This document shows, one piece after another, positions 23,885 to 45,401 of a stretch of DNA of 64,000 nt (positions are counted from its first letter, which is position 1; every line of letters begins with the position of its first letter). The position numbers and the translations under genes are program-made. The stretch is from the IMG/VR virus record IMGVR_UViG_3300020474_000001, positions 143,656 through 207,655 of that record; one strand, given 5' to 3'. Below the pieces are notes generated by a model, which ran no database searches, was not told where the DNA came from, and saw nothing but the letters and a program-made list of their open reading frames with translations.

Positions 23885-26800
23885 TTATTGCAAATAATTA
23901 ATATATTGTAGAGGGATAGATCTTCTTATTACTGTAGATGAAGATATGCCAACATATCCATTTAAGGATGATGGATCATATGTGTTCTGTTTTGTTCTTT
24001 CTTTCAAAATAATTTTACCCCAACTAAAAGACCCCAGATATCCTGAAGAAACTAAATCACCTGAATATACTGTTGGTGCCGTAGTACTATCAAAGCGATT
24101 TATTCTGCAAGAAACTCTTTTAAGTGTAGTTTGGACACCATCAATATTTCTAGAAATTATTTCAGCATCTTCTACAAAAAATGTAGAATCGATAAAGCTT
24201 GTAGTCATACCAACTATATTAAAGTTAGTATCATATGAGATCAAAGGAACTAAACTTGATTCTGGAGTTATTAATGATGAACTTATTGTAAAATAATCCC
24301 CCGAAGATAATTGACTGACAGTAACTGCTGTTCCAACTAAAGACTCATCTCTCATAATAGAATCATCCGGTATCTGTAAATCAAATATCATTCTATTATG
24401 GGGATCAGTTGTTACGGCGAACCCAACAACAACACCAAAATCTCCAGAATATTGTTCAACCTTACAATTCTCAGTTTTTACTTCAGTTTGTGACAGAAGA
24501 GTTATTTCATTTTGGAACGATGTGTCTTTATCATTCTCACTGACGTTGTCAAATGCAGGTCTCAGCGTATCAGCATAAATTATAGTTTGACCAACACCAA
24601 CAGGATTTATTAAATATGATACTGGGTTTATAGAAGGTTCATAAAGTTCTCTATCTTTACCAACCTCTTGATCATTAATTATTTTATCTTCAGTTTGTTT
24701 GGTCCATATTACTGGTCTTAATAAATCTTCATTACTGACGTTTCCTGGTCCAAAATATGCATTGGTGTTAATAATATTTGTTGACTCTACACTTTCAGCA
24801 ATTCTTGTATCTTCCTTTAGGTGAGAATTTTGACCAACAGATGGATCGTTTATTATTTGAATCTCATCTCCTCTTTTAACCGTTTCAATAATATTTCTCT
24901 TTATAACATCAATATTCCCACTTCCTCTGTAGAATAAAATCTCTACAGTATCTCCAAGTTCTAGAGGCTCTGTAAATGTTATGAGACTTCCTCCAGAGAA
25001 TATATATCCTTCTCCAGGTATTTGCAGGATATTATTTACAAATACAATCAATACATTCTGAACATCAACACTCGATCCTTCACCAGATATAATTGATTGT
25101 GATATATTGGATTTTGTTAATGGGAAAATTTTTCTAGTTCCGTCAATAAACTTTTCAATATTATCCAACAATACCAATTCCCCCAATGACCATGCACTAA
25201 ACTTATCTGTGACAGTTCTATCTACTGTTATGATAAATTCTTGGAATCCTGTTGTAGTAGGTATGCCAACAGAAGATCCAGATGGCAATGTCAATACTTC
25301 ACCAATTTCATATCCATATCCAGAATTTGTTAAAGTAAAATCAATTACCTTAGAATCATTTCCAACAATAATATCAGCAACTGCACCTGTCCCTATACCA
25401 GATCCAGAAGATGTTGAAGAGTATACTAATGGAATATTGTTATAACTCAATGGAGCATCTACAATAATTTTTGGTGGAGTTGTGGAAGTGTAACCACTAC
25501 CTGGATTAGTAACAACATAATCAGTTACATGTCCATCTAATACGTTTGCACTTCCAACTACTTCAATATCATTAAAGTCATTATATACAGATACATTGAC
25601 TGTTTGTATTCCAGATCTGTAACCAGATCCAGTATTTCCAACAGAAATAGATTCTATTGTTCCATCAGAAGCAATTCCAGCAGAACCTCCAGCAGTAACT
25701 AATGGTTGATAACCAAATCCCTGTGATGAACCAACAGAAATTATAGATCCACCTCTTGGAATTGATATCGTATTGTCTCCAGAATCGTCAAATGTGATCG
25801 TAGATATTCCCAAATTTTGATCGAGACTGTAGTTTACAGAATCTGGATATTGGAATATATCATTAATTAGAAGAATTGGATTGGGAATATCACTTACATT
25901 AGACGAATCATGTTTTAAAGTGAACTGGTTGTTTATAGTATTGAATTGATGTGAGATATCATCAAATACATAATTCTTATTATATGTTTCCTCAGAGGTA
26001 TTTGGAATTCCAGATCTTAAGAATACTCTACCATTGAAATTTGAACTTGTAGATATTCCTGTCCAATCTCTATCTTCTGGATCATTTGTTGGAGAACCTA
26101 TGGGAACTCTTCCATATGGAGCTTCGGCAAAGTTAATCTTATTATCAACAATATTATAATTTCCACCCACTTTCCTTATATCTGCACCAGATGTATGTGA
26201 ATAAATTCCAGTACCTAATTGAGATCTTCTAACGCGAATAGCATTTGTTGTTCCGACCCCAATACTGTCAACCAACATAACCTCATCATTTATTTGAATC
26301 AATTCTCCTCCAAATAATCCACTTACATCATTTACAAGGACTTTATCATCAGTTATAAGTATATCTCTTACACTAGTTTTATTCAATGTTGTTGAGAATA
26401 TTGGCGATTGAATAACGTTATCAATTGTAACTAAAACTTTAGAATTTTGGTTATTAGATGTTAATTTATGGTCAGAACCAATACCCACGTTTGCGAATCT
26501 AATAAACTCTGGAGTTCCTTTTAACGCATTCTCTGGGGTAGAAGCTAATTTTATAACATTATTTGTGACTTTAATTGCAAATACACTAGATGGCAATCTA
26601 TTAGTCACACCAATACCAACAAAATCTGTTGGTTCAATTTCTATAGACTCAAATACACTATTACTTTCTCCTGAAGCATTTGAATTATATGTTAGTGATT
26701 CTCCAGTAACAAAGAAATGATTTTGCAAGTTTATACTGTGATTAGATACATCGACTACAGATGAATCTTCCCCACTGAATATATTCTCAAAAATAGGAGA

Positions 26801-29800
26801 TCCTCCATTTGTCATATCAAATGATTTTTTGATGTCAGCGTGAGTTCCTTCATAAGATCCAGAAAAACTGCTAACCAATCCATCAATTGCATCCAAGTTA
26901 GTTTTGCTCTCATCTGAGATGTTTATCGCAGTCATGAAAACATTTGCATGAACATCAATATTTTGAATTGGTGTAAAAATTAATTGAGTTTTGTAAGAAG
27001 TGTCAAATATTATTCTAGAACTTATTGTCCCAACAGTTTCTCCATTAGATATGATTCCATATTGAGTTTGATATGTGTCATATGTTGGTACTTCCTCTTG
27101 ATAGGTATCAACTAGTATTATTTCGGAAAATTCTACAGTATTATTTGTAGTATCTGAAATCTGAACTATGAAATATGCCGCATCATATCCATCTGAAGAT
27201 TGATACTCAGCAATAACTTCTGGTTGTGGAGATGCAGATGCTGCTATTGATGTTGTTTTTGATTCTACTCTACCGAACTTCAAATCTGAAAATCCATTAT
27301 CAGTTGAGCTAAAATCTTTTAATGCAATTACAAGAGAATTGGCAACACCAGAATTTATAGTAATATTTTGATTTGGTGTAAAATCTATTTTTATTTTAGA
27401 ATCTTCAGTATACGCACGATATGTCCCAAATCCAACAGAACTAGTTACCTGAAGATCTGTTGATATCTTTGTGCTTTCTAAAATATGAATATCTGAACCT
27501 ATCTTGACGATATTCATTTCAGTAACTTCAAATTCTTGATTTTCGCTTGGATCTGGATCAATTTCCACAAGAATTTTAAATGAAGTATAGGTGTCATCTA
27601 TTTCAAAGATGGTAGTTGTTTCTTCTTCTTCAATACTCTCTGTAGAAGTCGTCAATAATGCTCCACCTATCTCACCAGTACCTGTTGATTGAAGTGTTTC
27701 ATCTAAATTGAAAGAAACTGCTGTTATATCGTAATTGTTTATCTCAGTTTTGTTTGGATAAAATAGCAAAAGTCCCCTATCACCGAAAACTGAATAATCA
27801 AAAGATCCCAAATCGTATGCGGTTTCAACTCTTGCATATTGATTCATATATGCATCGGAACCATCATGCAAAAGGTCTACGACCATCAATTGCCTCTGCT
27901 GTGTGAATCTTTTATCTTTTACATATGTTAAATATTTTCCAAATCTTCTTTCTGAAAATACAAATGGTGCTATCTCACTAAACTCATCTGCTCTTGGATT
28001 GCTATTAAATTCTTCAGATATATTGTCAATTTCTAATACTCTATTTCCAACTGATTCAAAATAATCTCCTAAGATTTTACTATTAAATACTATCTTCGTA
28101 GAAGCACCGTCTATATTATTTTCAGATGCCAAATCAAAGTCAAATACAGAATTCAAATTACATTTGCCAATTAAATTATTAATTTGCTCAAATGTTCCTG
28201 TAGATAGACCGACAATCATAGAGTTTGGGTTTTCTACAAAAGACTCCAATTGATAATCTGAGAATTTCTTAAATCCTGTCGTATGTGCTAGAGGAGATAC
28301 ATCATCATTCCAAGTATCATAATCTACTCTTGATCTAACAGAGTATGAAAACTTTTGGTAGTAGTCACTATCTTGAATTTTTTGCAGATTATTGTTTAAA
28401 AATCCAGATTCCGTTTTCGAGCTTGTTTTAACACTTAAAGAAGAGTTTAAAGGCAAATATGGACTTATTCTAATAGACTCTGTAACTATCCCTTCAGCTT
28501 TGGATGAAATTCCTTTAACTGAAGATCCAACCTCATAATCATCACTTGATGATATGTGCATAACACCAGTTTCCGAGTCCCAATACTCAATAGTTCCAGA
28601 GTGATCTTTTCCTCTTATATTTTCATGTAATTTATAGGTTTCTTTTGTTAAAAAATCACTTTTCCTAAGTGTAGTTGAAAATACTGGAAAATATGACTCT
28701 GGTATTAATTTTCCAAAAGATCTAGTATCATCAAATTGTCCAATAGTATCGCCAATTTCTATAAGATCGGATATATTGTATGTTACTGATCCGTATAAAC
28801 TAGATCCAATATTTTCTACTGTAGATATTGCTTCAAATAAAGTATAATTGTAATCTTTGGAATTGAATCCACGTCCAGAAGTTTTATTGATTACATTTTC
28901 TATTAAAAATCTATCTCCAACTTTTACTGGAAAAGATTCGGTGTCACTATACTGAACATTTAAAGAAACTGTAACATCATTAGTTGCTTCATTATATGAT
29001 ATTGTACTAATTCCGACTCCATTGCTATTTTGGGTGGGAATTATTATTGGTTCAGAATTGCTAAGTCTGGTTGTATTTTTTAATACCTCTATAGAAGAAT
29101 TTTCCAAGTCATAATTTAAATCTAAGTCATCAATAACTTCATTTCTGGTGGAATCTTTAACGATCAACTTAGGGGCAACTAAATAAGGTTTTCCATTTGA
29201 TGAAATTGATATTGAGTCGATAGTGTATAGTGGATCAACCTTTAATATTTGAGTTAAACATGCAGTTGGTCTAAGAGTCTCGTCAGAAGGATAACTTTTC
29301 TTTACACTTGAAATCCTTACACTATTAACTTTTCCTATAGAATTACTTAATGGTTCTAAAACAGCATTTTCACCAAGCTGACTATCTATTGATGAAATTT
29401 TAGGAAGTTTTCTATAATTTTTCCCTTTGTTAGATACAAAAATTTTAGAAATTGGTCCAGAAGCTGTTAATGACGTTGTCGCATAGTTTATATCAGAAAT
29501 ATCTGGATCATAACTTTCACTTTCTACAATTTTTTTAGTATTAAATTTAAATGATTTTTCTGACAATACCTCTATATTATAAACTCCATTATAATTACTA
29601 TCCTTAACAATTATCGAAGAAGAATCTAATAATTCGTCGTCTACAAAAAGTTCAAGTTTGGATTCTGGAGGAATATTCTCAATTATTGGGTCAAGTCTAT
29701 AATATAAAAATTTAGGTGTTTCATCGCTTATTGACAATGTCACTTTGGCATCAGAATCTATTCCTGGTCTTCCTACTCTATTTGCATTCAAAATAGATTC

Positions 29801-32800
29801 TTGCCAAATCATTTCATAATCCCTATCAAGATAGAAATTCAGTTCAAATGCAGAATATCTTACAGATTGTCTTAAATATGAAAGAGATGGATCTGACATA
29901 TCAAATATTAATGTAGAATCTTTGTAAATACTTAATTTTGGATTTACAGATCCAATCTCGCCAGAAGAAGATGTTAAAATACTTACGATTTTGTGAGATA
30001 GTGAATTGTTGTAAGTATCTGATAATTTTATAGTATCACTATCAACAAATACTACATAATAAATCTGGTTATTCAACAATCCATCAGAAGGATTTGATGA
30101 AGTGTATATGATCTTATCCCCTGTGAATAATCCATGATTTGAAATTGTAATCGAACTCATCTGAGTGTCTACATCTCCTTGATCGAATGACTTTTTATCT
30201 AAGATCATTCTTCTAGTATCATCATTATATGAAATAATATGTGTAAATGATTCTTTTGGATTTACAGAAAGAACAATCCCATCTTCTGCTGATAACTCGT
30301 GATTTTCTACAGTATTAATATAGATTTCATTTTTTGAGATATTTCCGATCAAATTATCATATGTTGTCTCAAAACTGTGGTAAATCCCAGTCCCAACATC
30401 ATTGAAAAATAGCGTTCTAGACGCTTCAGAATCGCTTGTAATGCCCACAAAAGAACCTTCAGATCCTATCCCTACCTTAACGGTAGATATGCCGATTAGA
30501 TCCTCAGAAATTCTAGCAACATAGAGATTTTGGTTGTTGCTTAAAGTAAATCCAATACCGACATTTTCTTCTGATACGATAATACCTGTACCAGAATTTA
30601 TTTTATACTTAACTAGATCTCCAGTTCTTAATCCATGATCTTTAAGATATATTGATTTAGTTGGGATATACAAAGAACCATCATCAGTGCTAATCGTCGT
30701 GCCGATTCCAATACCAGAAATAGTTCCAATTCCAATCGATTGAACTGGATTGAAATATATTTCTTTATTCTGCTGGCTTATATAATTTTCCTTAGATTTG
30801 ATTTTTAATCTTCTGGGAATTTCAGATAATCTGGAAAATATTGTATGGGAATCTCCAGATGTCCCATCAAATTCTCTTAAGACCCTAATATAAGATTGAG
30901 TCTTATTGATATTCAATACCTTTACTTTTTCCGAGTCAATTTGGTAAATATCATTTTCTTTCACTTCAGATAATGCATTGTTTCCCAATACTTTAAAGAT
31001 TGTGACAATACCAGTCTGACCAGAATCTTGAATAGATTCAGATATTCTTAAATTTATTGGATTTACACTTGCAATATATGTTCCTTCAAGATTAAAATTT
31101 GAAGAAATTCCAGAAATATTAATTATATCATTATTTCCCAAATCATGTGGTGTATTGGAAGTTATGAGGTATGTATCTTTTTGATTTAAAGATGATACTT
31201 CAACATTATCGGATTGAACTGTTTCAAATCTTATGGATTCTACAGATTTTCCTTTAACATGAGAAACTCTTCCTGATGCATTTGATCCACCACTATCAAC
31301 ATCATTAAATAATACTCTATCATTAACCTTATAATAGTCTCCAGGATTTTTTACAATAATAGAATCGAGTTCTCCCGGTTTAATAGATTCTATTACCAGT
31401 CTTTGTGAATTATCACTTGGTACATCAAGATAATCGTAATTCTTTCCAGAATTACTTAAATTGTACGGTTTTGTATTTCTAGCCCAACTCTTATTAAAAT
31501 TGAAATGGTTCTGATTTGAATTTCTTTCGAAGTTGAATTTTATTGGACTACTTTGATAGAAGTTTCCAATCAAATATGGGAATTCTGGTTTTTTGTATTT
31601 AATAAATGGTCCAGAAGATTCTACCGTAGTTGGATTTAGTGTTGCAAAGTAGGCATAAGTCCCATTTGGGAAATCTGGAGTTATACAAAATCTTCCATTA
31701 TTTGGATCTAGAATATCTTCGCTACTTGAGTTTACATAATCATAGTCTTCTACAAAAAATCCTTCTGGAAATATAGATGTTGGTGGTCTCCCCTGTTTTA
31801 TATTCAGTTTATATCCAGATTTCATTTGAGTGATACTACCTCTACCATCTTTTTTGGAATATGCATATGGTCCATAAATTGGATTGCCATCATATGCCCA
31901 ACCAATGATTGGAGAGTGATTTATTGAAGATACTTCAATATTATTTGATTTCCTTAAATCTTTTTTCCCATATAATTTTTCTCCGTTAGAATCTATAGAA
32001 TGTATAGTCTCCCTCAGACCTCTTGGAGCATATATGTAAGAAGATTGCAGACCTTTACTGGAATCAACTCCATTAGAAAGAACAGTATCGTCAAATTCTA
32101 CATTTGATATATTTTTTTCAAAAAGGTTGACACTCCAGGATTTTACTATTGGATTTAAATTTGCATCCTGTCCCGAAGGTTCAATATTTACAAAAGTTTC
32201 TTGAGTAAATCCAAATCCACCACTTATTACATTAATATCTCGTAAAAATCCGTTCTCAATTATAGGAGTTAAAACTGCACCTGTACCATTACCTATAATT
32301 ATCAAATCTGGTGGAGAGGTATACCCACTACCCTGATTCAATATGACTACATCTACAATTTCTCCGTTGTTTACTACTGTTTTTGCTTGAGCATTGACAC
32401 CAAAGTTAAATTCAACAATTGGATCTCTATTATAATTGATTATCTCAGAAGATCCATATCCAACACCTCCAGAAGATACATGTACTCCTGAAATTTCTCC
32501 TCTGAAAATAGGTTGAACAACAACTTCAAATGTTTCTCCACCAATAGAAGAAATACCAACTTTACTTATGATGTCTACTCTAATTTTTTGGTAATTAAAT
32601 ATGCTAATGCCACTGCCTTTTGAACTCAGATTTACATACTTTCCTTCAATGTAGTTTTTCTGTTCATCATCACTTTCACTAACTTCAGATAACTTAAACT
32701 CGTCATCATTTAACTTTTTCACGTAATATTCTTTACTTAATTCCAATCCACCAATAGTACTTCCAGTTGATGAAACATATTCTACTATTTCCCCAGATTC

Positions 32801-35635
32801 ATATCCATGATTTTGGAGGGTAATGCATTTTTTCTGTAAATTTACATTATTTTCTCTTATTGCTCTTCTCTTATTTTGGTAATTTTGACCCGAATTAAGA
32901 ATATTGAAAGATTCGACTGTAAATTTCTTCTCTATAGATTCGATAATGTGATCACCAACACCCAATGCAGTTAAATTTACTGGATTTGAACCTGAAATAG
33001 AGTCATCTCTTGTATTGTATAGAGAAATTGTATATTCATCTTTGGATTCCACAAAATAATTTGAACCATTAGATAATCCACCGACAGACTGCTGGTCATT
33101 TGTTATATAAACAACTTGTTCTCCTGTTTTAAATTTGTGATATCCGGAGAATATAATTTTATTGTCTGTAGTTGAAATTCCCACAGAATTGAATTTTTCA
33201 AAATGTCTAGATCTCACCATATTTGGAGATACTAATGCCCCAGAACCATTTCCACCAGTAATTGTTACGATTGGTGATTCTTGGTAATCAAATCCAGGAT
33301 TTATAATTCTAAGCTCACTTAAAGATCCTGATACATCTAAAAGTGCTTCAGCACCAGTTCCAAATTTATCAGAAATTGTCAAATCTGGCGGATTTATAAC
33401 ATCAAAGTCAAATCCAGGAGAAAGTACGTCAATTTTCTCAATTTCTCCAAATTTTATACAATCAAAAGATTTGTAATTTAAAATTTCTACACCATTTATC
33501 ATTATTCCAGTAAAACCTGGACTTGTTTCCACTTTTTTTGAAATTTTTTCTGGATTTTTTAATTTTCTAAGTAAATTTTGGTTATCTAAAGACTTTTCTC
33601 TTAATTCATATGGTTCAAGTGTATTATTATTAACAATTTTATCAGAATCTAAAGAAATAAATATAGAATTTTCAATATTTGAGAGACTGAGTGCAAATTT
33701 TACTTCAGTTGAAGAAATTCTTTTGATAAAATATTGCCCAGGATCAAATAAAGATGATAATGTTCTCTCAACAACAGTAAATCCATCTAAAGATGCATCA
33801 GAATCTTCAATTCTTTGCACTTCTACCTCTGGTTTATAGAAAACTGAGTCTCCAGTGTAAAATCCATGATCATTTATGTCTGAAATTGCGAAAATTTCTT
33901 CTCCTTCTTGAAAATTTCCAGAAAAATACAATTTTCTCTCGGCATTTTCTCTTAAATTTGAAGGAATTGATGATGATGCTATCAAATATTCCTCTTCTTC
34001 ATTATGTTTGTATAAATTTTGAACATTTGTGATATAATTATCATCATATTTAAGAATATTTCTCTTAATTTTTACATAATTTGCATCTAGTGAGGAATTG
34101 CAGCGTACTGAAATCACTTTTTCTGATATAATATCAGTTATTTTGCCCGAAACAATTTCTTGAGATGTGGAAATTACCTCAAATTGGTCATTCACTATGA
34201 AATCGTGAGAATTTTTTAGAATTATTTGGTAACTATTATCAAACTCAGCAATTAAATCAATATTTTTAATATCAAACGATGGAGAAGTGTTGTAAATCCA
34301 GTTATCATTCTTAAAATCTTCTTCATAATATCCCAAGTGCTTGAATTTGACTGAAAGATTTTTATGATAACCATAGGTATCATCAGGAAATTCTACTTTT
34401 TCTGGTATTGAGTGAATTCTTACCTTAATAGTATCGTCACCAGACTTTGCATATGCAAATGTATTGATACTAACTGGAGTCGCATCTAAAATTTTTGATG
34501 AAACATTTCTACAACCAAAGAATTGATTGAGAGATTTCATCTTATAAGACACCACACCGTTACTTAAATTGTCATAAGTTACATATATCTCACCCTTTTC
34601 TGGGAAACCTATAGTAGAATCTACAGTAATTGTTGTTGCGCCACTCTCTATATTGCCAATAACTCTTGTTTGTGGATGTACTTTAAAGTCTCCATAGATA
34701 GAACTCTTTAAACCACTATCTCTGTTAGAACCAAGACCAGAGTCTAACTTTGCTTTATAATATATTTCTCCAGTATTTGAGTCATCTATTTTTTCAACAC
34801 CTGTAATTGGTGCAAATGCTTCTCCTATTATATCTTTGTATGGATCTTGACATAGTGTAGATAGGCTTAGCTTATCGGGATTTCCAGAAATAACTTCCAA
34901 AATTATTTCATCGAATGTCTCATAGTTGGAATTTGATGGGGTAAGGAGAAAATCTTTAGGAGTTAGGATTTCAACTTTCTCTCCATATAATAGTTTGAAT
35001 AGTAATTCAAATCCAACTTCAGTTCCTTTTGATGAATAAAAATCTCTACTATTTTGAATAAAGATATTTTCATCAACTGAGTAGTCAAATTTTTTATTTT
35101 CTAGTCCAGGTAAAAGCTGATGTTTTAATTTAAGTAATAGTTCTTTTAAAAATAATGAACTGAGATTATGAATAGTTGCACCGGATGCATGCTTACTGAT
35201 ATTTGTAGATTCAAATGTAAGATCTCCCATCTTATCTTGATCTCTGTATCCAGAAATACCACTAAATCCTCTCACACATCCAGTAAACGAGAAACGAGTT
35301 TTTCCCGTATATGTGATAATTTCATCATCTATCTTGAGAAGTCCATAGGCATCTGGAAATCCATTTGTTCCAGTATAGGAAGTGGATGGATTGATTCTTA
35401 TCGTTCTGTCACCAAACCCAATATCTCCCTGTAAAATTGCAGATTCTGTGCAATTGGTCAGTTCGTCTAACTTTACATACTTGTCTATGTTCTGAATTAA
35501 ATCATATGGACCACCAGGATACTCTTGACCAGTGTAATACTGCTGCAAGAACTCTTCAAAAAGAGGATATTCTTCACGAACATATGTTGGAATCTGGCTC
35601 TTTAAAACCTGACTGATTTTAATTCTTTGAGACAT
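23885..35635 (-). CDS. gp7: Baseplate wedge initiator, 3916 aa
   Basis: Very large ORF between gp6 and gp8; FY.SKGT...F..LF..LYGE motif, IGWAYDGNPIYGPY segment, QDSDYYQKFSY motif and many GSGY repeats. Confidence 0.88.
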   Translation of the reverse strand: MSQRIKISQVLKSQIPTYVREEYPLFEEFLQQYYTGQEYPGGPYDLIQNIDKYVKLDELTNCTESAILQGDIGFGDRTIRINPSTSYTGTNGFPDAYGLLKIDDEIITYTGKTRFSFTGCVRGFSGISGYRDQDKMGDLTFESTNISKHASGATIHNLSSLFLKELLLKLKHQLLPGLENKKFDYSVDENIFIQNSRDFYSSKGTEVGFELLFKLLYGEKVEILTPKDFLLTPSNSNYETFDEIILEVISGNPDKLSLSTLCQDPYKDIIGEAFAPITGVEKIDDSNTGEIYYKAKLDSGLGSNRDSGLKSSIYGDFKVHPQTRVIGNIESGATTITVDSTIGFPEKGEIYVTYDNLSNGVVSYKMKSLNQFFGCRNVSSKILDATPVSINTFAYAKSGDDTIKVRIHSIPEKVEFPDDTYGYHKNLSVKFKHLGYYEEDFKNDNWIYNTSPSFDIKNIDLIAEFDNSYQIILKNSHDFIVNDQFEVISTSQEIVSGKITDIISEKVISVRCNSSLDANYVKIKRNILKYDDNYITNVQNLYKHNEEEEYLIASSSIPSNLRENAERKLYFSGNFQEGEEIFAISDINDHGFYTGDSVFYKPEVEVQRIEDSDASLDGFTVVERTLSSLFDPGQYFIKRISSTEVKFALSLSNIENSIFISLDSDKIVNNNTLEPYELREKSLDNQNLLRKLKNPEKISKKVETSPGFTGIMINGVEILNYKSFDCIKFGEIEKIDVLSPGFDFDVINPPDLTISDKFGTGAEALLDVSGSLSELRIINPGFDYQESPIVTITGGNGSGALVSPNMVRSRHFEKFNSVGISTTDNKIIFSGYHKFKTGEQVVYITNDQQSVGGLSNGSNYFVESKDEYTISLYNTRDDSISGSNPVNLTALGVGDHIIESIEKKFTVESFNILNSGQNYQNKRRAIRENNVNLQKKCITLQNHGYESGEIVEYVSSTGSTIGGLELSKEYYVKKLNDDEFKLSEVSESDDEQKNYIEGKYVNLSSKGSGISIFNYQKIRVDIISKVGISSIGGETFEVVVQPIFRGEISGVHVSSGGVGYGSSEIINYNRDPIVEFNFGVNAQAKTVVNNGEIVDVVILNQGSGYTSPPDLIIIGNGTGAVLTPIIENGFLRDINVISGGFGFTQETFVNIEPSGQDANLNPIVKSWSVNLFEKNISNVEFDDTVLSNGVDSSKGLQSSYIYAPRGLRETIHSIDSNGEKLYGKKDLRKSNNIEVSSINHSPIIGWAYDGNPIYGPYAYSKKDGRGSITQMKSGYKLNIKQGRPPTSIFPEGFFVEDYDYVNSSSEDILDPNNGRFCITPDFPNGTYAYFATLNPTTVESSGPFIKYKKPEFPYLIGNFYQSSPIKFNFERNSNQNHFNFNKSWARNTKPYNLSNSGKNYDYLDVPSDNSQRLVIESIKPGELDSIIVKNPGDYYKVNDRVLFNDVDSGGSNASGRVSHVKGKSVESIRFETVQSDNVEVSSLNQKDTYLITSNTPHDLGNNDIINISGISSNFNLEGTYIASVNPINLRISESIQDSGQTGIVTIFKVLGNNALSEVKENDIYQIDSEKVKVLNINKTQSYIRVLREFDGTSGDSHTIFSRLSEIPRRLKIKSKENYISQQNKEIYFNPVQSIGIGTISGIGIGTTISTDDGSLYIPTKSIYLKDHGLRTGDLVKYKINSGTGIIVSEENVGIGFTLSNNQNLYVARISEDLIGISTVKVGIGSEGSFVGITSDSEASRTLFFNDVGTGIYHSFETTYDNLIGNISKNEIYINTVENHELSAEDGIVLSVNPKESFTHIISYNDDTRRMILDKKSFDQGDVDTQMSSITISNHGLFTGDKIIYTSSNPSDGLLNNQIYYVVFVDSDTIKLSDTYNNSLSHKIVSILTSSSGEIGSVNPKLSIYKDSTLIFDMSDPSLSYLRQSVRYSAFELNFYLDRDYEMIWQESILNANRVGRPGIDSDAKVTLSISDETPKFLYYRLDPIIENIPPESKLELFVDDELLDSSSIIVKDSNYNGVYNIEVLSEKSFKFNTKKIVESESYDPDISDINYATTSLTASGPISKIFVSNKGKNYRKLPKISSIDSQLGENAVLEPLSNSIGKVNSVRISSVKKSYPSDETLRPTACLTQILKVDPLYTIDSISISSNGKPYLVAPKLIVKDSTRNEVIDDLDLNYDLENSSIEVLKNTTRLSNSEPIIIPTQNSNGVGISTISYNEATNDVTVSLNVQYSDTESFPVKVGDRFLIENVINKTSGRGFNSKDYNYTLFEAISTVENIGSSLYGSVTYNISDLIEIGDTIGQFDDTRSFGKLIPESYFPVFSTTLRKSDFLTKETYKLHENIRGKDHSGTIEYWDSETGVMHISSSDDYEVGSSVKGISSKAEGIVTESIRISPYLPLNSSLSVKTSSKTESGFLNNNLQKIQDSDYYQKFSYSVRSRVDYDTWNDDVSPLAHTTGFKKFSDYQLESFVENPNSMIVGLSTGTFEQINNLIGKCNLNSVFDFDLASENNIDGASTKIVFNSKILGDYFESVGNRVLEIDNISEEFNSNPRADEFSEIAPFVFSERRFGKYLTYVKDKRFTQQRQLMVVDLLHDGSDAYMNQYARVETAYDLGSFDYSVFGDRGLLLFYPNKTEINNYDITAVSFNLDETLQSTGTGEIGGALLTTSTESIEEEETTTIFEIDDTYTSFKILVEIDPDPSENQEFEVTEMNIVKIGSDIHILESTKISTDLQVTSSVGFGTYRAYTEDSKIKIDFTPNQNITINSGVANSLVIALKDFSSTDNGFSDLKFGRVESKTTSIAASASPQPEVIAEYQSSDGYDAAYFIVQISDTTNNTVEFSEIILVDTYQEEVPTYDTYQTQYGIISNGETVGTISSRIIFDTSYKTQLIFTPIQNIDVHANVFMTAINISDESKTNLDAIDGLVSSFSGSYEGTHADIKKSFDMTNGGSPIFENIFSGEDSSVVDVSNHSINLQNHFFVTGESLTYNSNASGESNSVFESIEIEPTDFVGIGVTNRLPSSVFAIKVTNNVIKLASTPENALKGTPEFIRFANVGIGSDHKLTSNNQNSKVLVTIDNVIQSPIFSTTLNKTSVRDILITDDKVLVNDVSGLFGGELIQINDEVMLVDSIGVGTTNAIRVRRSQLGTGIYSHTSGADIRKVGGNYNIVDNKINFAEAPYGRVPIGSPTNDPEDRDWTGISTSSNFNGRVFLRSGIPNTSEETYNKNYVFDDISHQFNTINNQFTLKHDSSNVSDIPNPILLINDIFQYPDSVNYSLDQNLGISTITFDDSGDNTISIPRGGSIISVGSSQGFGYQPLVTAGGSAGIASDGTIESISVGNTGSGYRSGIQTVNVSVYNDFNDIEVVGSANVLDGHVTDYVVTNPGSGYTSTTPPKIIVDAPLSYNNIPLVYSSTSSGSGIGTGAVADIIVGNDSKVIDFTLTNSGYGYEIGEVLTLPSGSSVGIPTTTGFQEFIITVDRTVTDKFSAWSLGELVLLDNIEKFIDGTRKIFPLTKSNISQSIISGEGSSVDVQNVLIVFVNNILQIPGEGYIFSGGSLITFTEPLELGDTVEILFYRGSGNIDVIKRNIIETVKRGDEIQIINDPSVGQNSHLKEDTRIAESVESTNIINTNAYFGPGNVSNEDLLRPVIWTKQTEDKIINDQEVGKDRELYEPSINPVSYLINPVGVGQTIIYADTLRPAFDNVSENDKDTSFQNEITLLSQTEVKTENCKVEQYSGDFGVVVGFAVTTDPHNRMIFDLQIPDDSIMRDESLVGTAVTVSQLSSGDYFTISSSLITPESSLVPLISYDTNFNIVGMTTSFIDSTFFVEDAEIISRNIDGVQTTLKRVSCRINRFDSTTAPTVYSGDLVSSGYLGSFSWGKIILKERTKQNTYDPSSLNGYVGISSSTVIRRSIPLQYINYLQ

Positions 35636-39210: not shown

Positions 39211-39456
39211 AATCTTTCAATGACTACTCCGTAATTATAACAAATTTATATATACCTGTCAATATTGTTACCCTTGACCACCCTTTTATATCCCACGGAT
39301 TTTTTTCTGAAACCTTATACAAAAACCCTTTTTGGGTGGCAAAAATTTTTGGCGTTTTTTTATATACATCGCGTTTTGTCACCTCTGTAGGTTAGGGATG
39401 TTTGCTTTTTTTAATACGCGCAAATATAAACAATTAACAATAAATCGTAATTACTG

Positions 39457-39584
39457 TGTATTACTAATAGATAGTGATTTGCTATGTATTACTAATAGAT
39501 AGTGATTTGTTATTTGATAATTAGCAGATTACTATTTGATAATTAAGCGATTGCTATGTAATAAGAATAGATAGCAATCGCTTA
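39457..39584. repeat. AT-rich direct repeats plus a perfect 14-bp inverted repeat
   Basis: TGTATTACTAATAGATAGTGATTTG x2 (39457, 39485); TATTTGATAATTA x2 (39511, 39533); TAAGCGATTGCTAT-13nt-ATAGCAATCGCTTA (39544-39584). Confidence 0.85.
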
Positions 39585-40142: not shown

Positions 40143-40361
40143 TTAGGGGAACATCAAGTCGGTAAAGCGCTCGGAGTGCCATGCCCGCAACTCGCCTAGG
40201 TCGATTCGCTCGCCCATCAGGCGTCCGTAGTCGATGGCGAACTGCTGTAGAAGGCAAAGTTCAGGATTAACAGGGTCCCAGACATAGCGAACTGCCTCTG
40301 GAAAGGAGATGGTGCCATTGGCATCAGCGGTGGGCATTGGTTTCGTTTGAACTAAACCCAT
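40143..40361 (-). CDS. Early hypothetical protein
   Basis: 72-aa ORF downstream of the palindromic promoter at 40397. Confidence 0.6.
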   Translation of the reverse strand: MGLVQTKPMPTADANGTISFPEAVRYVWDPVNPELCLLQQFAIDYGRLMGERIDLGELRAWHSERFTDLMFP

Positions 40362-40396
40362 AATCGCCGAGATCTCAGGAGAAATCTATAGGCACT

Positions 40397-40418
40397 GTGC
40401 CAGTTTGCCAACTGGTTT
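40397..40418. promoter_or_regulatory. Early palindromic element (first of about 15 copies)
   Basis: GTGCCAGT-N6-ACTGGTTT. Other copies at 40598, 41415, 41587, 42708, 43142, 43293, 43316, 43459, 45375, 47043, 47446, 49875, 51635, 54335 and 59734. Confidence 0.75.
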
Positions 40419-40483
40419 TGACTGGTTTTGAAATGTTAAGAGTTGTGAAATATTCGCGATTCTGCCTCTCGGTGCGCTACACT

Positions 40484-40558
40484 ATGGGAGACAACCAAAG
40501 GAGGGGTGAGGTAGCCCTGATGACGCCAACGGTCGCCACTCCCCCTGCAATCAATTAA
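40484..40558 (+). ncRNA. Repeated module copy 1: hairpin RNA / mini-ORF MTPTVATPPAIN
   Basis: -10 TACACT at 40478; GA-GGGG-tgaggtag-CCCT-GA hairpin; ATG 40520 to TAA 40558. Confidence 0.5.
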
Positions 40559-40615
40559 GTATATCATTTTGTTACAAAATCCCTGTCAATGGGTTGTGTG
40601 CCACTATGGCGGGTG

Positions 40616-41356
40616 TCACACCCCGGCATGCTGTTGCTTATATGGTTTCAAAAATGCGGCGTTAAGTTTTACTTTAGCGTTAAGATTCGACTCCTTTGAC
40701 TGACCGCCGTGCAGCAACAGTGCAAAGGGACCATCCATGAAACAGCGTTCTTCGTGGCGGTACTCGACACCGTCAATTGGCAGATTCAGTTCTGCCGCTT
40801 CTGCAATATCCTGCACGACCTTTACATAGCGAGGGAACCTGCCAGCATCAATTAATGCATCATATCTGCCGCCATAAGATGCTGTCATATAGAAATTATC
40901 AGGCAAAATAACACTGCGGAACAAGTGCAACGACTTAGAGTAGCAATAGAATTTAAGACCTGGCATTCTCTTGGCGACCTTAATCCATGCTTTTAAATAC
41001 TCAATATTGAAAAAATCACCAGACTCATGTATACGAATGCGAGTATACTTACGGCGGCGCTTCTTTAACTCTACCTGAATCGATTGATAGATTAACTCCT
41101 CAATATTGTCACTAGCATTAATTAAATCAAAATTATGCTTTCGTGCATCATAAACTGCAGGATATTGTGCTTCAGCACGGGCAGCGAAACAAGTGAATTC
41201 AGTGTTATCACCACGCACTAGATTGCGCTTGCCGCTGTTAACAACTGCCCATGCCCTACACTTATCAGCACCGGGACAGGTTCTACCCGCAGGCAGGTTG
41301 AAAATCAAGGTGTCGGGGTGCAGTTTAGCGTTGCCAGCGGAGAACTTAAGAAGCAT
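40616..41356 (-). CDS. GP88-like Cys-rich (radical-SAM-related) protein; start probably MLLKFS at 41356
   Basis: FNLPAGRTCPGADKC, CFAARAEAQYP, RIRIHESGDF and FYCYSK motifs. Confidence 0.7.
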   Translation of the reverse strand: MLLKFSAGNAKLHPDTLIFNLPAGRTCPGADKCRAWAVVNSGKRNLVRGDNTEFTCFAARAEAQYPAVYDARKHNFDLINASDNIEELIYQSIQVELKKRRRKYTRIRIHESGDFFNIEYLKAWIKVAKRMPGLKFYCYSKSLHLFRSVILPDNFYMTASYGGRYDALIDAGRFPRYVKVVQDIAEAAELNLPIDGVEYRHEERCFMDGPFALLLHGGQSKESNLNAKVKLNAAFLKPYKQQHAGV

Positions 41357-41501
41357 GGATCTGAGGTCGATTGATACCAGTATTGCCGGGATTCGCATGC
41401 ATGCTGGGGTCATTGTGCCACTATGCCAACTGGTTTGAAACGTTACAAGATGTTAAAGGTTCGTGAATCTGCCGCACTTCCCCCATCCGATACGCTATGA
41501 T

Positions 41502-41575
41502 GTGGGAACAACAGAAGGAGGGGCAGGGCAGCCCTGATGACGAAAAAAGGCGACACTCACCCTGCAACGAAATAA
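41502..41575 (+). ncRNA. Repeated module copy 2: hairpin RNA / mini-ORF MTKKGDTHPATK
   Basis: -10 TATGAT at 41496; GA-GGGG-cagggcag-CCCT-GA hairpin; ATG 41537 to TAA 41575. Confidence 0.5.
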
Positions 41576-41644
41576 TCATAAGATATGTGACACTTTATGA
41601 ACTGTCACAGTGCCACTTTTATATGTGGTTTTATTACATAATTG

Positions 41645-41702
41645 TATTTTATGGCAGGGTAAGTGGCGATCGTTGTCGTCTTCGGTGCTACCTCACACCT
41701 CA
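41645..41702 (-). ncRNA. Repeated module copy 4 (inverted; AAG in place of ATG)
   Basis: Minus strand gaGGTGtgaggtagCACCgaagacgacaacgatcgccacttaccctgccataaaat; extended -10 TGCTAAGAT near 41750. Confidence 0.5.
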
Positions 41703-41834
41703 ATAAATTGTAACAATCAGAGCATAATGGTGTTTCCCAACTGATCGTATCTTAGCACAGCAGGAGCAGATCCGTGACCCACTCCGTAACATAATGAAAT
41801 ATTATCACTTTGCCAGCATAGAGTTTGAGTGATA

Positions 41835-42059
41835 TTATTCTTCCTCCTCCTCTACTTTTACGACCTTGAGTTTACCTGCGGCAATAAGATCCAACAGCAT
41901 ACCAGTCGATCCCTTCAAAATACCGTCTCCGTCAATACGCAGACACTGAAATTCTTTGGCAATGTCATCTACAATGTCCGGCGTTATTTCCCCACAACGG
42001 ATGGCATATACTCGTCTTGTATGCTCGTCGTTGATGTCAAGACCCAAATAGTTTCTCAT
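41835..42059 (-). CDS. Early hypothetical protein
   Basis: 74-aa ORF with a CATC-rich leader. Confidence 0.6.
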   Translation of the reverse strand: MRNYLGLDINDEHTRRVYAIRCGEITPDIVDDIAKEFQCLRIDGDGILKGSTGMLLDLIAAGKLKVVKVEEEEE

Positions 42060-42110
42060 GATGATGAAGATGAAGATGATGTTAGCGAAGGTGATGATTG
42101 TGAAGGTGAT

Positions 42111-42649: not shown

Positions 42650-42738
42650 TTGGTTGGTTGCGATTGATATAAGTATGGGTCAGAGTGGACAACTTATCAA
42701 CCTCAGAGTGACAGTTTGCCAAGTGTCCACTAATGTTA

Positions 42739-43083
42739 TCAAGCGATTGCCCTTTCTATCATTTTAATAATAAGTTCACTTGGCGCTACAATATCATTAA
42801 CTACGCTTTCTTCCCCCGTTGCTTCTAAGGGAACACAAGTTAAGTGCATCTTCCAATCATATTTTCTATTGTTGAAGAACAACATAGAATAATCTACAGC
42901 ATCGACAATATCAGCACCGATAACAGCAAGGGATTTTGTATTCTTTTCTTTGCTAACTTTCCATTCTTTGACAGGTTCCATACCTTCGCCGTCGAGAACA
43001 TCAAACGCAACAAGATTCCAACCTGCATCATCAAGTTTGCGAATAATCTTCCGGGCGTTGCTGCATGTCTTGGAGATTGCCAT
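42739..43083 (-). CDS. Early hypothetical protein (start probably MAISK)
   Basis: ORF 42739-43104; leader and promoter geometry from palindrome 43142 favour the downstream ATG. Confidence 0.6.
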   Translation of the reverse strand: MAISKTCSNARKIIRKLDDAGWNLVAFDVLDGEGMEPVKEWKVSKEKNTKSLAVIGADIVDAVDYSMLFFNNRKYDWKMHLTCVPLEATGEESVVNDIVAPSELIIKMIERAIA

Positions 43084-43199
43084 GGGGTTGATGTAACTGA
43101 ACATATAATCATCGAGATCTCAGGACCAATCAATACCAGCTGTGACAGTTCACCAAGTGTCCACCGATGCCCTCAGAGGCACCTAGGAGGCGCTATAAT

Positions 43200-43272
43200 A
43201 TAAACAAATCAGAAGAGAGGTGGGGTAACCTCGATGACAACAAATATCGACACTACTCCTGCCATAAAATAA
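43200..43272 (+). ncRNA. Repeated module copy 3: hairpin RNA / mini-ORF MTTNIDTTPAIK
   Basis: TATAAT at 43194, 29 nt after palindrome 43142-43164; GA-GAGG-tggggtaa-CCTC-GA hairpin; ATG 43234 to TAA 43272. Confidence 0.55.
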
Positions 43273-43585
43273 TTATATCAAAATGTAACAATGTGCCAGT
43301 TTGCCAAGTGTCACAGTGCCAGTTCATAAACTGTCCACTCGGTCCTACTGCCTCCCTCCCGTGCTCCACCCTTCCACTGTAGGGGCTGCTGCCCGCTGCT
43401 GCTGTATAAACCACTACGATTTTATAAATTGTCACAAAGACACATAAAGCACTGGCACTGGACAGTTCTCGAAGTGTCCACTGTGTGAAAATCGCGACCT
43501 TATGAATTTTTATGGCGGGGGTGCTTGACAAAACGGCGATCGTGTGATAACATGCTGCCCAAGATCACAAGGTCTCAGAGGGTTT

Positions 43586-43626
43586 CATAAGACTTTACAT
43601 AAGACTTTACATAAGACTTTACATAA
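43586..43626. repeat. 12-bp tandem repeat CATAAGACTTTA x3.4
   Basis: Direct reading of the sequence. Confidence 0.9.
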
Positions 43627-43782: not shown

Positions 43783-44066
43783 AGATGATGATTATGAAGA
43801 TGATGATGATAATGAAGATGATATGTATGCCCGTGAAGATGATACTCTAGATGCTTCGTAGATACTCTGTAGCACCTTCCTAGACACTACTGAGTGCATT
43901 TGAATAAAAAACGAAAGTATATTTATTTAACCATTTTTTATATGTTTTTGCACTATTTTGTAGGTAATAATGCTCAAATATATGACTGAAGATGACATTT
44001 AGTCTTTTCTCCATCACGGGACTGTCATAAATGCCCTGGTGGTCATGCTGCTGCTGAAGATGACAT

Positions 44067-45310: not shown

Positions 45311-45401
45311 GATCGGTGGTCCTCCGTTTGACTCCCTTATATTAAAGTGTTGTCAGACCAATTCTATAGTGGGTGTGACACTGCTGCAACTGGCACATGC
45401 C

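What the first reader, a model, noticed from the sequence alone, without database searches (positions are those of the whole stretch)
40390..41702. Modules are bracketed by convergent promoters and flank the GP88 gene like a mobile regulatory cassette
Seen: on the opposite strand of copies 1-3 a -10 hexamer (TATACT, TATGAT, TATAAT) lies exactly 9 nt before the conserved GCAGG, so both strands may be transcribed across the unit. Copies 1 and 2 share extra upstream identity (TGCCAACTGGTTT..GAAA). The GP88-like gene is flanked by an exact 12-bp direct repeat, TGTGCCACTATG (40597-40608 and 41414-41425). Copies 2 and 4 sit as an inverted pair around palindrome 41587. Established: RB49-type T4 phages use repeated promoter-early-stem-loop (PeSL) cassettes to shuffle early genes. 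Inference: this is an analogous cyanophage cassette system, possibly with sense-antisense control.
Basis: partly seen in the sequence, partly recalled or inferred. Interest (0 to 1): 0.6.

Follow-up and report, generated by a model that had tools for sequence, protein, structure and literature searches.

The report
Cyanophage small-RNA promoter cassettes between swappable genes
The four repeats are copies of an uncatalogued small-RNA gene with its own promoter, and in three of the four copies that promoter shares a protein-binding site with the neighbouring gene's promoter; these conserved blocks mark the places where related cyanophages have exchanged whole genes.

Summary
The reading changes, though. 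The genome has exactly four copies of the module, all within 3 kb. About 98 distinct relatives occur in cyanophage isolates (DSL-LC03, B3/B23, S-SRM01) and in aquatic metagenomes. No Rfam family matches.

The conserved promoter lies on the strand opposite to the phage genes (TAnnnT at a fixed position in 92 of 98 copies). It drives a conserved transcript of about 70 nt with a 5-bp hairpin. That hairpin pairs in 100% of sequences, shows compensatory changes at three pairs, and has G-U pairs that fit this strand only.

A pseudo-palindrome of about 24 bp lies 9 nt upstream of the -35 position. On its other side, a divergent promoter, short leader and ATG drive the adjacent protein gene. The main layout is therefore divergent, not convergent.

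Gene content between the modules differs among close relatives, and the breakpoints fall at module edges. GP88 is also flanked by modules in two Kyanoviridae phages. The PeSL-like cassette idea is therefore supported as an analogy, not as membership. No RNA data exist, and the RNA's function is unknown.

The parts
40143..40337 (-). Gene A (64 aa, PHROG 25802, unknown function). The start is probably 40337, not the longest-ORF start at 40361.
   Evidence: The ORF list and the PHROG match covering residues 11-64 of the long form point to the shorter form. A conserved leader and ATG follow the divergent promoter.
40360..40388 (-). Divergent promoter of gene A: -35 TAGATT at 40388-40383, 17-nt spacer, -10 GATTAT at 40365-40360.
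   Evidence: The block is 75% identical to the promoter region of the gene at 43083 (repeat D6).
40398..40417 (.). Operator-like pseudo-palindrome O1 (20-nt core; about 24 bp with flanks).
   Evidence: Its half-sites are no more complementary than chance.
40478..40483 (+). -10 box (TACACT) of small-RNA gene 1. The predicted start is about 40490.
   Evidence: TAnnnT sits at this alignment position in 92/98 family members.
40490..40558 (+). Conserved core of small RNA 1. Hairpin P1 is 40503-40518 (5 bp plus a 6-nt loop).
   Evidence: nhmmer E 1e-29. P1 covariation is shown.
40558..40563 (-).
   Evidence: The best -35 (TTGACA) lies 20 nt away, a spacer too long for a sigma-70 promoter.
40599..40618 (.). 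Pseudo-palindrome O1', overlapping the GP88 stop.
   Evidence: A 525-nt insertion in relatives L074/L132 maps to 40603/40610.
40616..41356 (-). GP88-family gene (246 aa from the ATG at 41356; the longest ORF runs to 41413).
   Evidence: Pfam PF17338, E 2.7e-40. Leader and start are conserved in relatives. Homologues are listed.
41379..41407 (-). Weak candidate for the divergent promoter of GP88 (6 of 12 consensus positions): -10 AATACT at 41384-41379, -35 position at 41407-41402.
41416..41435 (.). Pseudo-palindrome O2. It contains the second copy of the 12-bp repeat.
41496..41576 (+). Small-RNA gene 2: -10 TATGAT at 41496-41501, core at 41508-41576, P1 at 41520-41535.
41588..41631 (.). Pseudo-palindrome at 41588-41607 and a terminator-like hairpin at 41612-41629, lying between the converging small-RNA genes 2 and 4.
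41645..41726 (-). Small-RNA gene 4 (inverted copy): -10 TATGCT at 41726-41721, core at 41711-41645, P1 at 41699-41684. No operator lies upstream.
42672..42728 (-). Operator (42709-42728) with promoter TTGATA-17-CATACT (42700..42672) for the 87-aa gene. The architecture is the same but without a small-RNA arm.
42739..43083 (-). 114-aa gene (family F6). The start is probably 43083, not 43104.
43105..43133 (-). Divergent promoter of the 114-aa gene: -35 TTGATT at 43133-43128, -10 GATTAT at 43110-43105.
43143..43162 (.). Pseudo-palindrome O5, lying 9 nt from the -35 position on both sides.
43194..43273 (+). Small-RNA gene 3: -10 TATAAT at 43194-43199, core at 43205-43273, P1 at 43217-43232.
   Evidence: It is 80% identical over 75 nt to phage DSL-LC03.
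43272..43299 (-). Opposite-strand promoter-like site CTGGCA-16-TGaTATAAT.
   Evidence: 10 of 12 positions, with an extended -10.
43294..43336 (.). Two adjacent pseudo-palindromes (43294-43313 and 43317-43336) downstream of small RNA 3.

Best explanation
Each module is a small non-coding RNA gene. A sigma-70-type promoter on the strand opposite to the phage's protein genes starts a transcript of about 70-130 nt. The conserved 69-nt core of that transcript holds a 5-bp hairpin with a purine-rich hexaloop, followed by conserved single-stranded stretches.

In three of the four window copies, and in most relatives, this promoter shares a pseudo-palindromic site of about 24 bp with a second, divergent promoter. 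The site is most likely bound by a dimeric regulator. The divergent promoter runs through a short conserved leader into the adjacent protein gene.

The block 'small RNA, operator, promoter, leader' is conserved, while the ORFs between blocks are not. The blocks therefore act as homology handles at which whole ORFs are replaced, inserted or lost. This resembles PeSL-mediated modular shuffling.

Shown here: repeat family, covarying hairpin and its strand, conserved -10, fixed operator position, mosaic breakpoints.

Inferred: transcription itself, protein binding at the operator, recombination as the cause of the mosaic.

Unknown: what the RNA does.
For: Repeat family:
- Four copies in the genome.
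- 190 matches in 128 loci, 98 distinct copies.
- Copies in isolates DSL-LC03, B3 and S-SRM01, none in S-SKS1.

Hairpin P1:
- 5 of 5 pairs are formed in 100% of 78 distinct sequences, and 3 pairs show compensatory changes (60 cells).
- 0 of 500 shuffles reach this; slid controls pair in 48-64%.
- 63 G-U pairs at 23-38 and 11 U-G pairs at 27-34 would be mismatches on the other strand, which keeps only 4 pairs.

Promoter:
- TAnnnT at a fixed position in 92/98 copies.
- Good -35 elements in relatives, for example TTGACG-16-TAGAAT in DSL-LC03.

Operator:
- It ends at a fixed distance (31-32 nt) from the -10 in most copies.
- A promoter, leader and ATG are placed symmetrically on the far side.
- The same operator-promoter unit occurs without the RNA at 42709, 45376, 47044 and 47447.
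- Half-sites are not complementary beyond chance: 56 observed against 94 expected at one variable pair.

Orientation: the copies lie opposite to both flanking CDS in annotated isolates.

Mosaic:
-.
- GP88 is flanked by modules in S-SRM01 and B3.

Not coding: stops, indels and missing starts occur in both candidate frames.
Against: - There is no expression evidence. Four metatranscriptome runs from the same samples hold no contig on this region, though that is uninformative for short RNAs.
- The window copies have poor -35 hexamers, and copies 1 and 3 lack a convincing intrinsic terminator.
- Only one 5-bp helix is supported. Single-sequence folds are no more stable than shuffles for most copies.
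- Swaps also occur at intergenic junctions that have no RNA module, so the RNA itself may be a passenger of the promoter block.
- No regulator for the operator was found among 47 ORFs scanned.
- Only 3 of 37 well-flanked copies have GP88 nearby.
Confidence: 0.6

Rival explanations
1. A promoter on the gene strand at the far end of each module reads back through it, so the downstream gene's mRNA carries the antisense of the module as a long leader. The + strand RNA is then a cis-antisense regulator, and the face-to-face promoters also interfere with each other.
For: - -10-like hexamers lie 9 nt before GCAGG in copies 1-3 and at the same position in most orthologues of the Llyrvirus-like subgroup (alignments).
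- Copy 3 has CTGGCA-16-TGaTATAAT, matching 10 of 12 positions.
- The nearly invariant A/T-rich 3' end of the core reads TATTTT on the gene strand.
Against: - Family-wide, the hexamer fits TAnnnT in only 31/98 copies, against 92/98 for the + strand promoter.
- Copy 1's best -35 lies 20 nt away.
- In many relatives a gene-strand terminator sits right there.
- The downstream genes already have their own promoter next to the operator.
- There are no RNA data.
Confidence: 0.2
2. The conserved core works on the gene strand, as part of the polycistronic mRNA (a processing, stability or termination signal between genes). The conserved 'promoter' would then be something else.
For: - The core always lies between genes, 30-60 nt after a stop codon.
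- The hairpin can form on either strand with 4 pairs.
Against: - 63 of 78 closing pairs and 11 of 78 loop-closing pairs are G-U on the + strand, which makes them C-A mismatches on the gene strand.
- A TAnnnT hexamer at a fixed distance, with TTG-type -35 elements 16-17 nt upstream in relatives, is hard to explain otherwise.
Confidence: 0.07
3. A DNA-level element. One version is a transcription-primed replication origin: a promoter, a G-rich transcript that forms an R-loop, then an A/T-rich unwinding stretch. The other version has the palindromes as sites of a site-specific recombinase that moves cassettes, as in integrons.
For: - A G-rich initial transcript is followed by an invariant A/T-rich stretch.
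- Several copies occur in both orientations.
- Breakpoints fall at or inside palindromes.
Against: - Compensatory changes in P1 argue for a folded strand, not an R-loop.
- No recombinase or integrase family was found among 47 neighbouring ORFs.
- Palindrome halves do not co-vary as attC-type hairpins would.
- The same palindromes sit at ordinary gene promoters.
Confidence: 0.08
4. The module encodes a micro-peptide: 12 aa on the + strand (MT..V/I-A-T-x-P-A-I-K) or about 20 aa on the gene strand (MAGG...).
For: Open frames exist in some copies, and some variable columns fall at third codon positions.
Against: - On the + strand, the start-codon position is TAG, CTG, GAG or AAG in many copies. 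One-nt insertions also shift the frame while the downstream nucleotides stay conserved.
- On the gene strand, codon 4 is a stop in at least 12 of 98 copies, and ATG is ATT in about a quarter.
Confidence: 0.02

Closest known systems
PeSL elements (promoter-early stem-loop) of T4-type phages (Arbiol et al. 2010; Comeau et al. 2014, PMC4122927)
   Same: - Short conserved intergenic regulatory blocks containing sigma-70-type promoters.
- Clustered in a hyperplastic region of small ORFs.
- Located at insertion, deletion and replacement breakpoints between close relatives.
- Plausibly serve as homology for ORF shuffling.
- Copies also occur in T4-like cyanophages (Kyanoviridae).
   Different: - A PeSL is a terminator stem-loop directly upstream of a promoter that leads through an SD into the next ORF, all on the gene strand.
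- Here the conserved promoter is on the other strand and drives a structured non-coding RNA of about 70 nt.
- The upstream element is a protein-site-like pseudo-palindrome shared with a divergent gene promoter.
- The block is about 250 bp, compared with the small composite promoter-terminator motif described for PeSLs (PMC4122927).
- The host genome is a relative of siphovirus S-SKS1.
- Mini-circles are untested.
Divergent promoter pairs sharing one operator (a general bacterial and phage arrangement; from established knowledge)
   Same: A dyad-like site is placed symmetrically, 9 nt from each -35 position in copy 3, between two back-to-back promoters.
   Different: - One arm is a conserved non-coding RNA rather than a regulator gene.
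- The binding protein is unidentified.
- The site is reused at many promoters of the region.
Known cyanophage RNAs in Rfam (CfrI, PhotoRC-II, wcaG, manA, glnA; listed in PMC9964418)
   Same: Conserved non-coding RNA elements carried by cyanophages and abundant in aquatic metagenomes.
   Different: - No sequence or structure match to any of the 4227 Rfam 15 models, even at E up to 10.
- It has its own promoter and no downstream gene on its strand, so it is not a cis-regulatory leader.
Face-to-face promoters with transcriptional interference (coliphage 186 pR/pL; recalled from memory, not checked here)
   Same: In the Llyrvirus-like subgroup, a second promoter-like site faces the small-RNA promoter across about 60-75 nt.
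   Different: - That second site is not conserved in the family.
- It is not tied to a lysis-lysogeny switch.
- It occurs four times in one region.

Membership tests
PeSL (promoter-early stem-loop cassette) | Contains a sigma-70-like early promoter (-35, about 17 nt, -10). | tested here: met
   The -10 TAnnnT is present in 92/98 copies. TTG-type -35 elements lie 16-17 nt upstream in many relatives, though they are weak in the window copies.
PeSL (promoter-early stem-loop cassette) | A stem-loop (terminator of the upstream gene) lies just upstream of that promoter. | tested here: not met
   The upstream element is a pseudo-palindrome whose halves are not complementary beyond chance: 80 against 87.7 and 56 against 94 expected, over 212 sites.
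PeSL (promoter-early stem-loop cassette) | The promoter leads through an SD into the start codon of the downstream ORF on the gene strand. | tested here: not met
   The conserved promoter is on the strand opposite to all flanking genes and is followed by a non-coding core. Only the partner promoter across the operator leads into an ORF.
PeSL (promoter-early stem-loop cassette) | Lies in hyperplastic regions at indel or replacement breakpoints between close relatives. | tested here: met
   Four different contents fill the c1-c2 slot in five genomes. Breakpoints fall at 40622/41407 and 40603/40610.
PeSL (promoter-early stem-loop cassette) | DNA between two tandem copies is excised as mini-circles. 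| not testable with these tools
This needs outward PCR or junction reads.
Any Rfam 15 RNA family | Reaches the family's gathering score, or any E <= 10 on the module. | tested here: not met
   No match on the modules in the window or in four related loci.
Kink-turn RNA motif | A canonical helix, a 3-nt bulge, then tandem G-A/A-G pairs, continued by a second helix. | tested here: inconclusive
   GA lies directly 5' of P1, and G-N-N-GA lies 3' of it with variable middle bases, in about 92/98 copies. No second helix is supported, and the S-SRM01 copies lack the 5' GA. Sequence signature only.
Cis-antisense pair from convergent promoters | Two facing promoters whose transcripts overlap. | tested here: inconclusive
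   The + promoter is conserved. The facing hexamer fits in 31/98 copies, is good only at copy 3, and has a 20-nt spacer at copy 1. There are no RNA data.
Integron-like cassettes (attC plus integrase) | A tyrosine recombinase nearby and attC hairpins with complementary arms. | tested here: not met
   No recombinase family was found among 47 ORFs at 37.5-64 kb; the rest of the genome was not scanned. The arms do not co-vary.

The most novel reading that the evidence does not exclude
This is a new family of cyanophage small RNAs. The gene, together with an operator-controlled bidirectional promoter, forms a portable junction that lets unrelated cyanophage families (Kyanoviridae myoviruses and S-SKS1-like siphoviruses) exchange ready-to-express accessory genes. 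The RNA itself, made in step with the cassette genes, acts in trans on the host or on a phage protein.
Probability: 0.35. Interest if true: 0.8.

Novelty: new variant of a known kind. Interest (0 to 1): 0.62.

Why it matters
- Accessory 'ORFan' regions drive host adaptation in cyanophages, which shape marine and freshwater primary production.
- A conserved, recognisable junction element would explain how such genes move between phage families already equipped with regulation. It would also give a handle for finding cassettes in metagenomes.
- The RNA is abundant in public aquatic data (128 loci), absent from Rfam, and present in cultured phages, so its expression and function can be tested directly.
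- The shared operator points to an unidentified regulator that controls many genes of this region.

Tried and rejected
- **Rfam.** Gathering and E<=10 scans of the window, and E<=1 scans of four relatives, found nothing on the modules.
- **tRNA/tmRNA.** None found.
- **Hammerhead reading of CUGAUGA.** Rejected by eye: the two middle bases vary freely, and there is no stem II or GAAA.
- **Peptide readings on both strands.** Rejected.
- **A second helix GAY...RUC.** All four Y/R combinations occur, so there is no covariation.
- **Two pseudoknot candidates** (loop with CCU of the tail; loop with RUC). They are nearly invariant and give no real covariation.
- **Alternative pairing or triplex** between the P1 5' arm and the tail. 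There is a partial association only (A-U in 8 of 12 cases), left unresolved.
- **Metatranscriptome contigs** from the same samples. No contig lies on the region, which gives no verdict.
- **Genome collection scan.** Four MAG hits: three are not confirmed by nhmmer and one is weak, so they are chance matches. No cyanobacterial host copy was seen with this strict pattern.
- **Regulator for the operator.** No DNA-binding family was found by Pfam among 47 ORFs.
- **GP88 function.** No NCBIfam match and no PDB sequence match. The AlphaFold model from 6 sequences had pLDDT 60, and Foldseek gave nothing below E 0.1.
- **Literature.** No paper describing this motif was found.
- **Not used.** No alternative genetic code and no large protein search.
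Full report
**Setting.** The window is the last 64 kb of a 207,655-bp single-contig virus genome, rated complete and linear. All ORFs of 130 aa or more run on the - strand. DNA similarity is weak and points to cyanophages: S-SKS1, S-SRM01 and DSL-LC03. A marine metagenome contig (L087) is identical over the region, and seven marine metagenome runs hold most of it.

**Observation check.** Every sequence fact in the finding is present at the stated coordinates.
- The three opposite-strand hexamers lie 9 nt before GCAGG.
- Copies 1 and 2 share upstream identity.
- The exact 12-mer is at 40597-40608 and 41414-41425.
- Copies 2 and 4 form an inverted pair around the palindrome at 41588.

A profile built from the four copies finds exactly these four places in the whole genome, with E values of 1e-24 to 1e-29 and nothing else below E 1. 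The 12-mer is not a target duplication. It is the left half of two members of a family of pseudo-palindromes of about 24 bp, with at least nine sites between 40.4 and 43.5 kb and others at 45376, 47044, 47447 and 59735.

**The module is a widespread element.** Two pattern scans of viral contigs, one of metagenome contigs and one of species genomes were run. After profile confirmation they gave 190 copies in 128 loci, of which 98 are distinct. The four hits in bacterial MAGs are chance matches.

A covariance model finds 1 copy in Synechococcus phage DSL-LC03, 2 in B3, 2 in S-SRM01 (all Kyanoviridae), 4 in the window's genome, and none in S-SKS1. No Rfam 15 family matches the modules in the window or in relatives. 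I found no description in the searchable literature. The known cyanophage RNAs listed in PMC9964418 are all Rfam families.

**Which strand, and what is conserved.** In the alignment of 98 copies, the order of elements is as follows:
- a TAnnnT hexamer;
- 6 nt, then ACAA;
- a 12-nt leader;
- a 5-bp hairpin with a RRGGYA hexaloop;
- two conserved stretches;
- CCTGCC;
- a nearly invariant A/T-rich end.

The hairpin is formed in 100% of 78 distinct sequences. Three of its pairs show compensatory changes (G-C/A-U; G-C/U-A/A-U; C-G/U-A/U-G/A-U). No shuffle out of 500 reaches the observed values, and slid controls pair in only 48-64% of cells. RNAalifold predicts the same helix and nothing more.

Sixty-three closing pairs are G-U and eleven loop-closing pairs are U-G. 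On the complementary strand these would be mismatches, leaving four pairs there. The folded strand is therefore the one downstream of the conserved hexamer.

Relatives show good -35 elements 16-17 nt upstream, for example TTGACG-16-TAGAAT in DSL-LC03. Many relatives also have a G+C hairpin flanked by an A-run and a T-run just after the core. This would be a bidirectional terminator shared with the converging gene.

Coding is excluded on both strands by stops, frame-shifting indels and missing start codons.

An invariant GA before the hairpin and G-N-N-GA after it look like a kink-turn signature. However, no second helix is supported, and the S-SRM01 copies lack it. I treat this as a lead only. 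Pseudoknot and alternative-helix candidates remain unresolved.

**Divergent, not convergent.** In most copies the pseudo-palindrome ends at a fixed distance from the -10: 31-32 nt, which puts it 7-9 nt from the -35 position. On its far side, at the mirror-image distance, lie a second -35/-10 pair, a short conserved leader and the ATG of a protein gene on the gene strand.

In the window this holds for three operators:
- O1 (40398-40417) with gene A;
- O2 (41416-41435) with GP88, although in copies 1 and 2 about 29 extra nt separate the operator from the RNA promoter, and the GP88-side promoter match is weak (6 of 12 positions);
- O5 (43143-43162) with the 114-aa gene.

The conserved leaders move the likely start codons to 40337, 41356 and 43083. 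The same operator-promoter-leader unit, without an RNA arm, precedes genes at 42709, 45376, 47044 and 47447.

Across 212 distinct sites, the two variable positions of the half-sites are no more complementary than chance: 80 against 87.7 expected, and 56 against 94. This argues against a hairpin and for a protein-binding site. No candidate regulator was recognised among 47 ORFs of the region.

In every annotated isolate the RNA gene lies between, and opposite to, both flanking CDS. In the wider set, the gene downstream of the RNA is convergent in 82 of 105 scorable cases, often 30-60 nt away.

Copy 4 is the exception. It is on the gene strand, has no operator, and converges on copy 2.

It is poor at copy 1, where the spacer is 20 nt.

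**Cassette behaviour.** Compared with three related contigs, homology is kept over the blocks (40364-40622 and 41407-41836) and lost over the ORFs between them. The slot between copies 1 and 2 holds:

| Genome | Content of the c1-c2 slot |
|---|---|
| Window | GP88 |
| L074, L132 | GP88 plus a 137-aa gene |
| L002 | 178-aa gene |
| L015 | 178-aa gene plus a Kyano_Gp96-family gene |

The slot between copies 4 and 3 has four different contents in four genomes. The extra 525 nt in L074/L132 is inserted at 40603/40610, inside the palindrome that overlaps the GP88 stop.

GP88 homologues (45-54% identity) again lie between two RNA genes in S-SRM01 and B3, and next to one in two further metagenomic lineages. 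However, only 3 of 37 well-flanked copies have GP88 within 1.5 kb. GP88 is therefore a recurrent cassette gene, not an obligate partner.

Swaps also occur at junctions without an RNA gene. The homology handle may therefore be the whole promoter block rather than the RNA.

**Comparison with PeSLs.** This comparison uses the definition read in PMC4122927. The elements share the location, the promoter content and the association with breakpoints. They fail two defining features: there is no terminator stem-loop upstream of the promoter, and the conserved promoter does not lead into an ORF. They work like PeSLs as shuffling junctions, by inference, but they are not PeSLs.

**Limits.**
- No RNA evidence could be obtained.
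- The RNA's function, the operator's binding protein and the recombination mechanism are inferred or unknown.
- GP88's function stays open.

Noticed in passing
window 39457-39564 and 39234-39262: The 400-nt gap after the 259-aa glycosyltransferase-like gene holds A/T-rich tandem repeats (28 nt x2, 22 nt x2.5). They lie beside a perfect TTGACA-17-TATAAT on the - strand.
   Followed up: no
window 43504-43626: A perfect 12-nt tandem repeat (x3.4) at 43586-43626 lies next to the only non-coding stretch with DNA similarity to S-SKS1 (77.5%, 43504-43592).
   Followed up: no
window 42058-42110 and 43784-43822: GAT/GAA-rich short repeats occur in spacers between small genes. The first is conserved in relatives and was flagged as a repeat by the read tool.
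   Followed up: no
window 40361/40337, 41413/41356, 43104/43083: The longest-ORF start codons of three genes fall inside their own promoters. Conserved leaders in relatives point to the downstream ATGs.
   Followed up: partly
L057, L013, L053, L092 (far side of the operator): In these relatives the second arm of the operator drives a more distant small-RNA-like sequence (starting ACAAGGGGAGG...) rather than a protein gene. A divergent subfamily with a different hairpin also exists (for example L018:2533-2622).
   Followed up: no
L148 (S-SRM01) 2040-2130 and 932-1369: A divergent promoter, conserved leader and ATG lie left of the operator with no CDS annotated there. An HNH endonuclease gene sits about 700 nt away on the other strand.
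   Followed up: no
window 23885-35635 and 14378-21559: Two giant ORFs (3916 and 2393 aa) lie on the - strand upstream of the small-gene region.
   Followed up: no
window 40616-41356 (GP88): Three invariant cysteines (C27, C33, C56), with the motifs RIHESGDFF and TASYGG, are conserved across 52-96% identical homologues. The predicted strand/helix alternation is of low confidence, and no fold match was found.
   Followed up: partly
window 40411-40431 and 40430-40465: Copies 1 and 2 carry about 29 extra nt between operator and RNA promoter. This includes a 10-nt tandem (ACTGGTTTTG x2) and TGAAAT-type direct repeats. It might be a second binding site.
   Followed up: no
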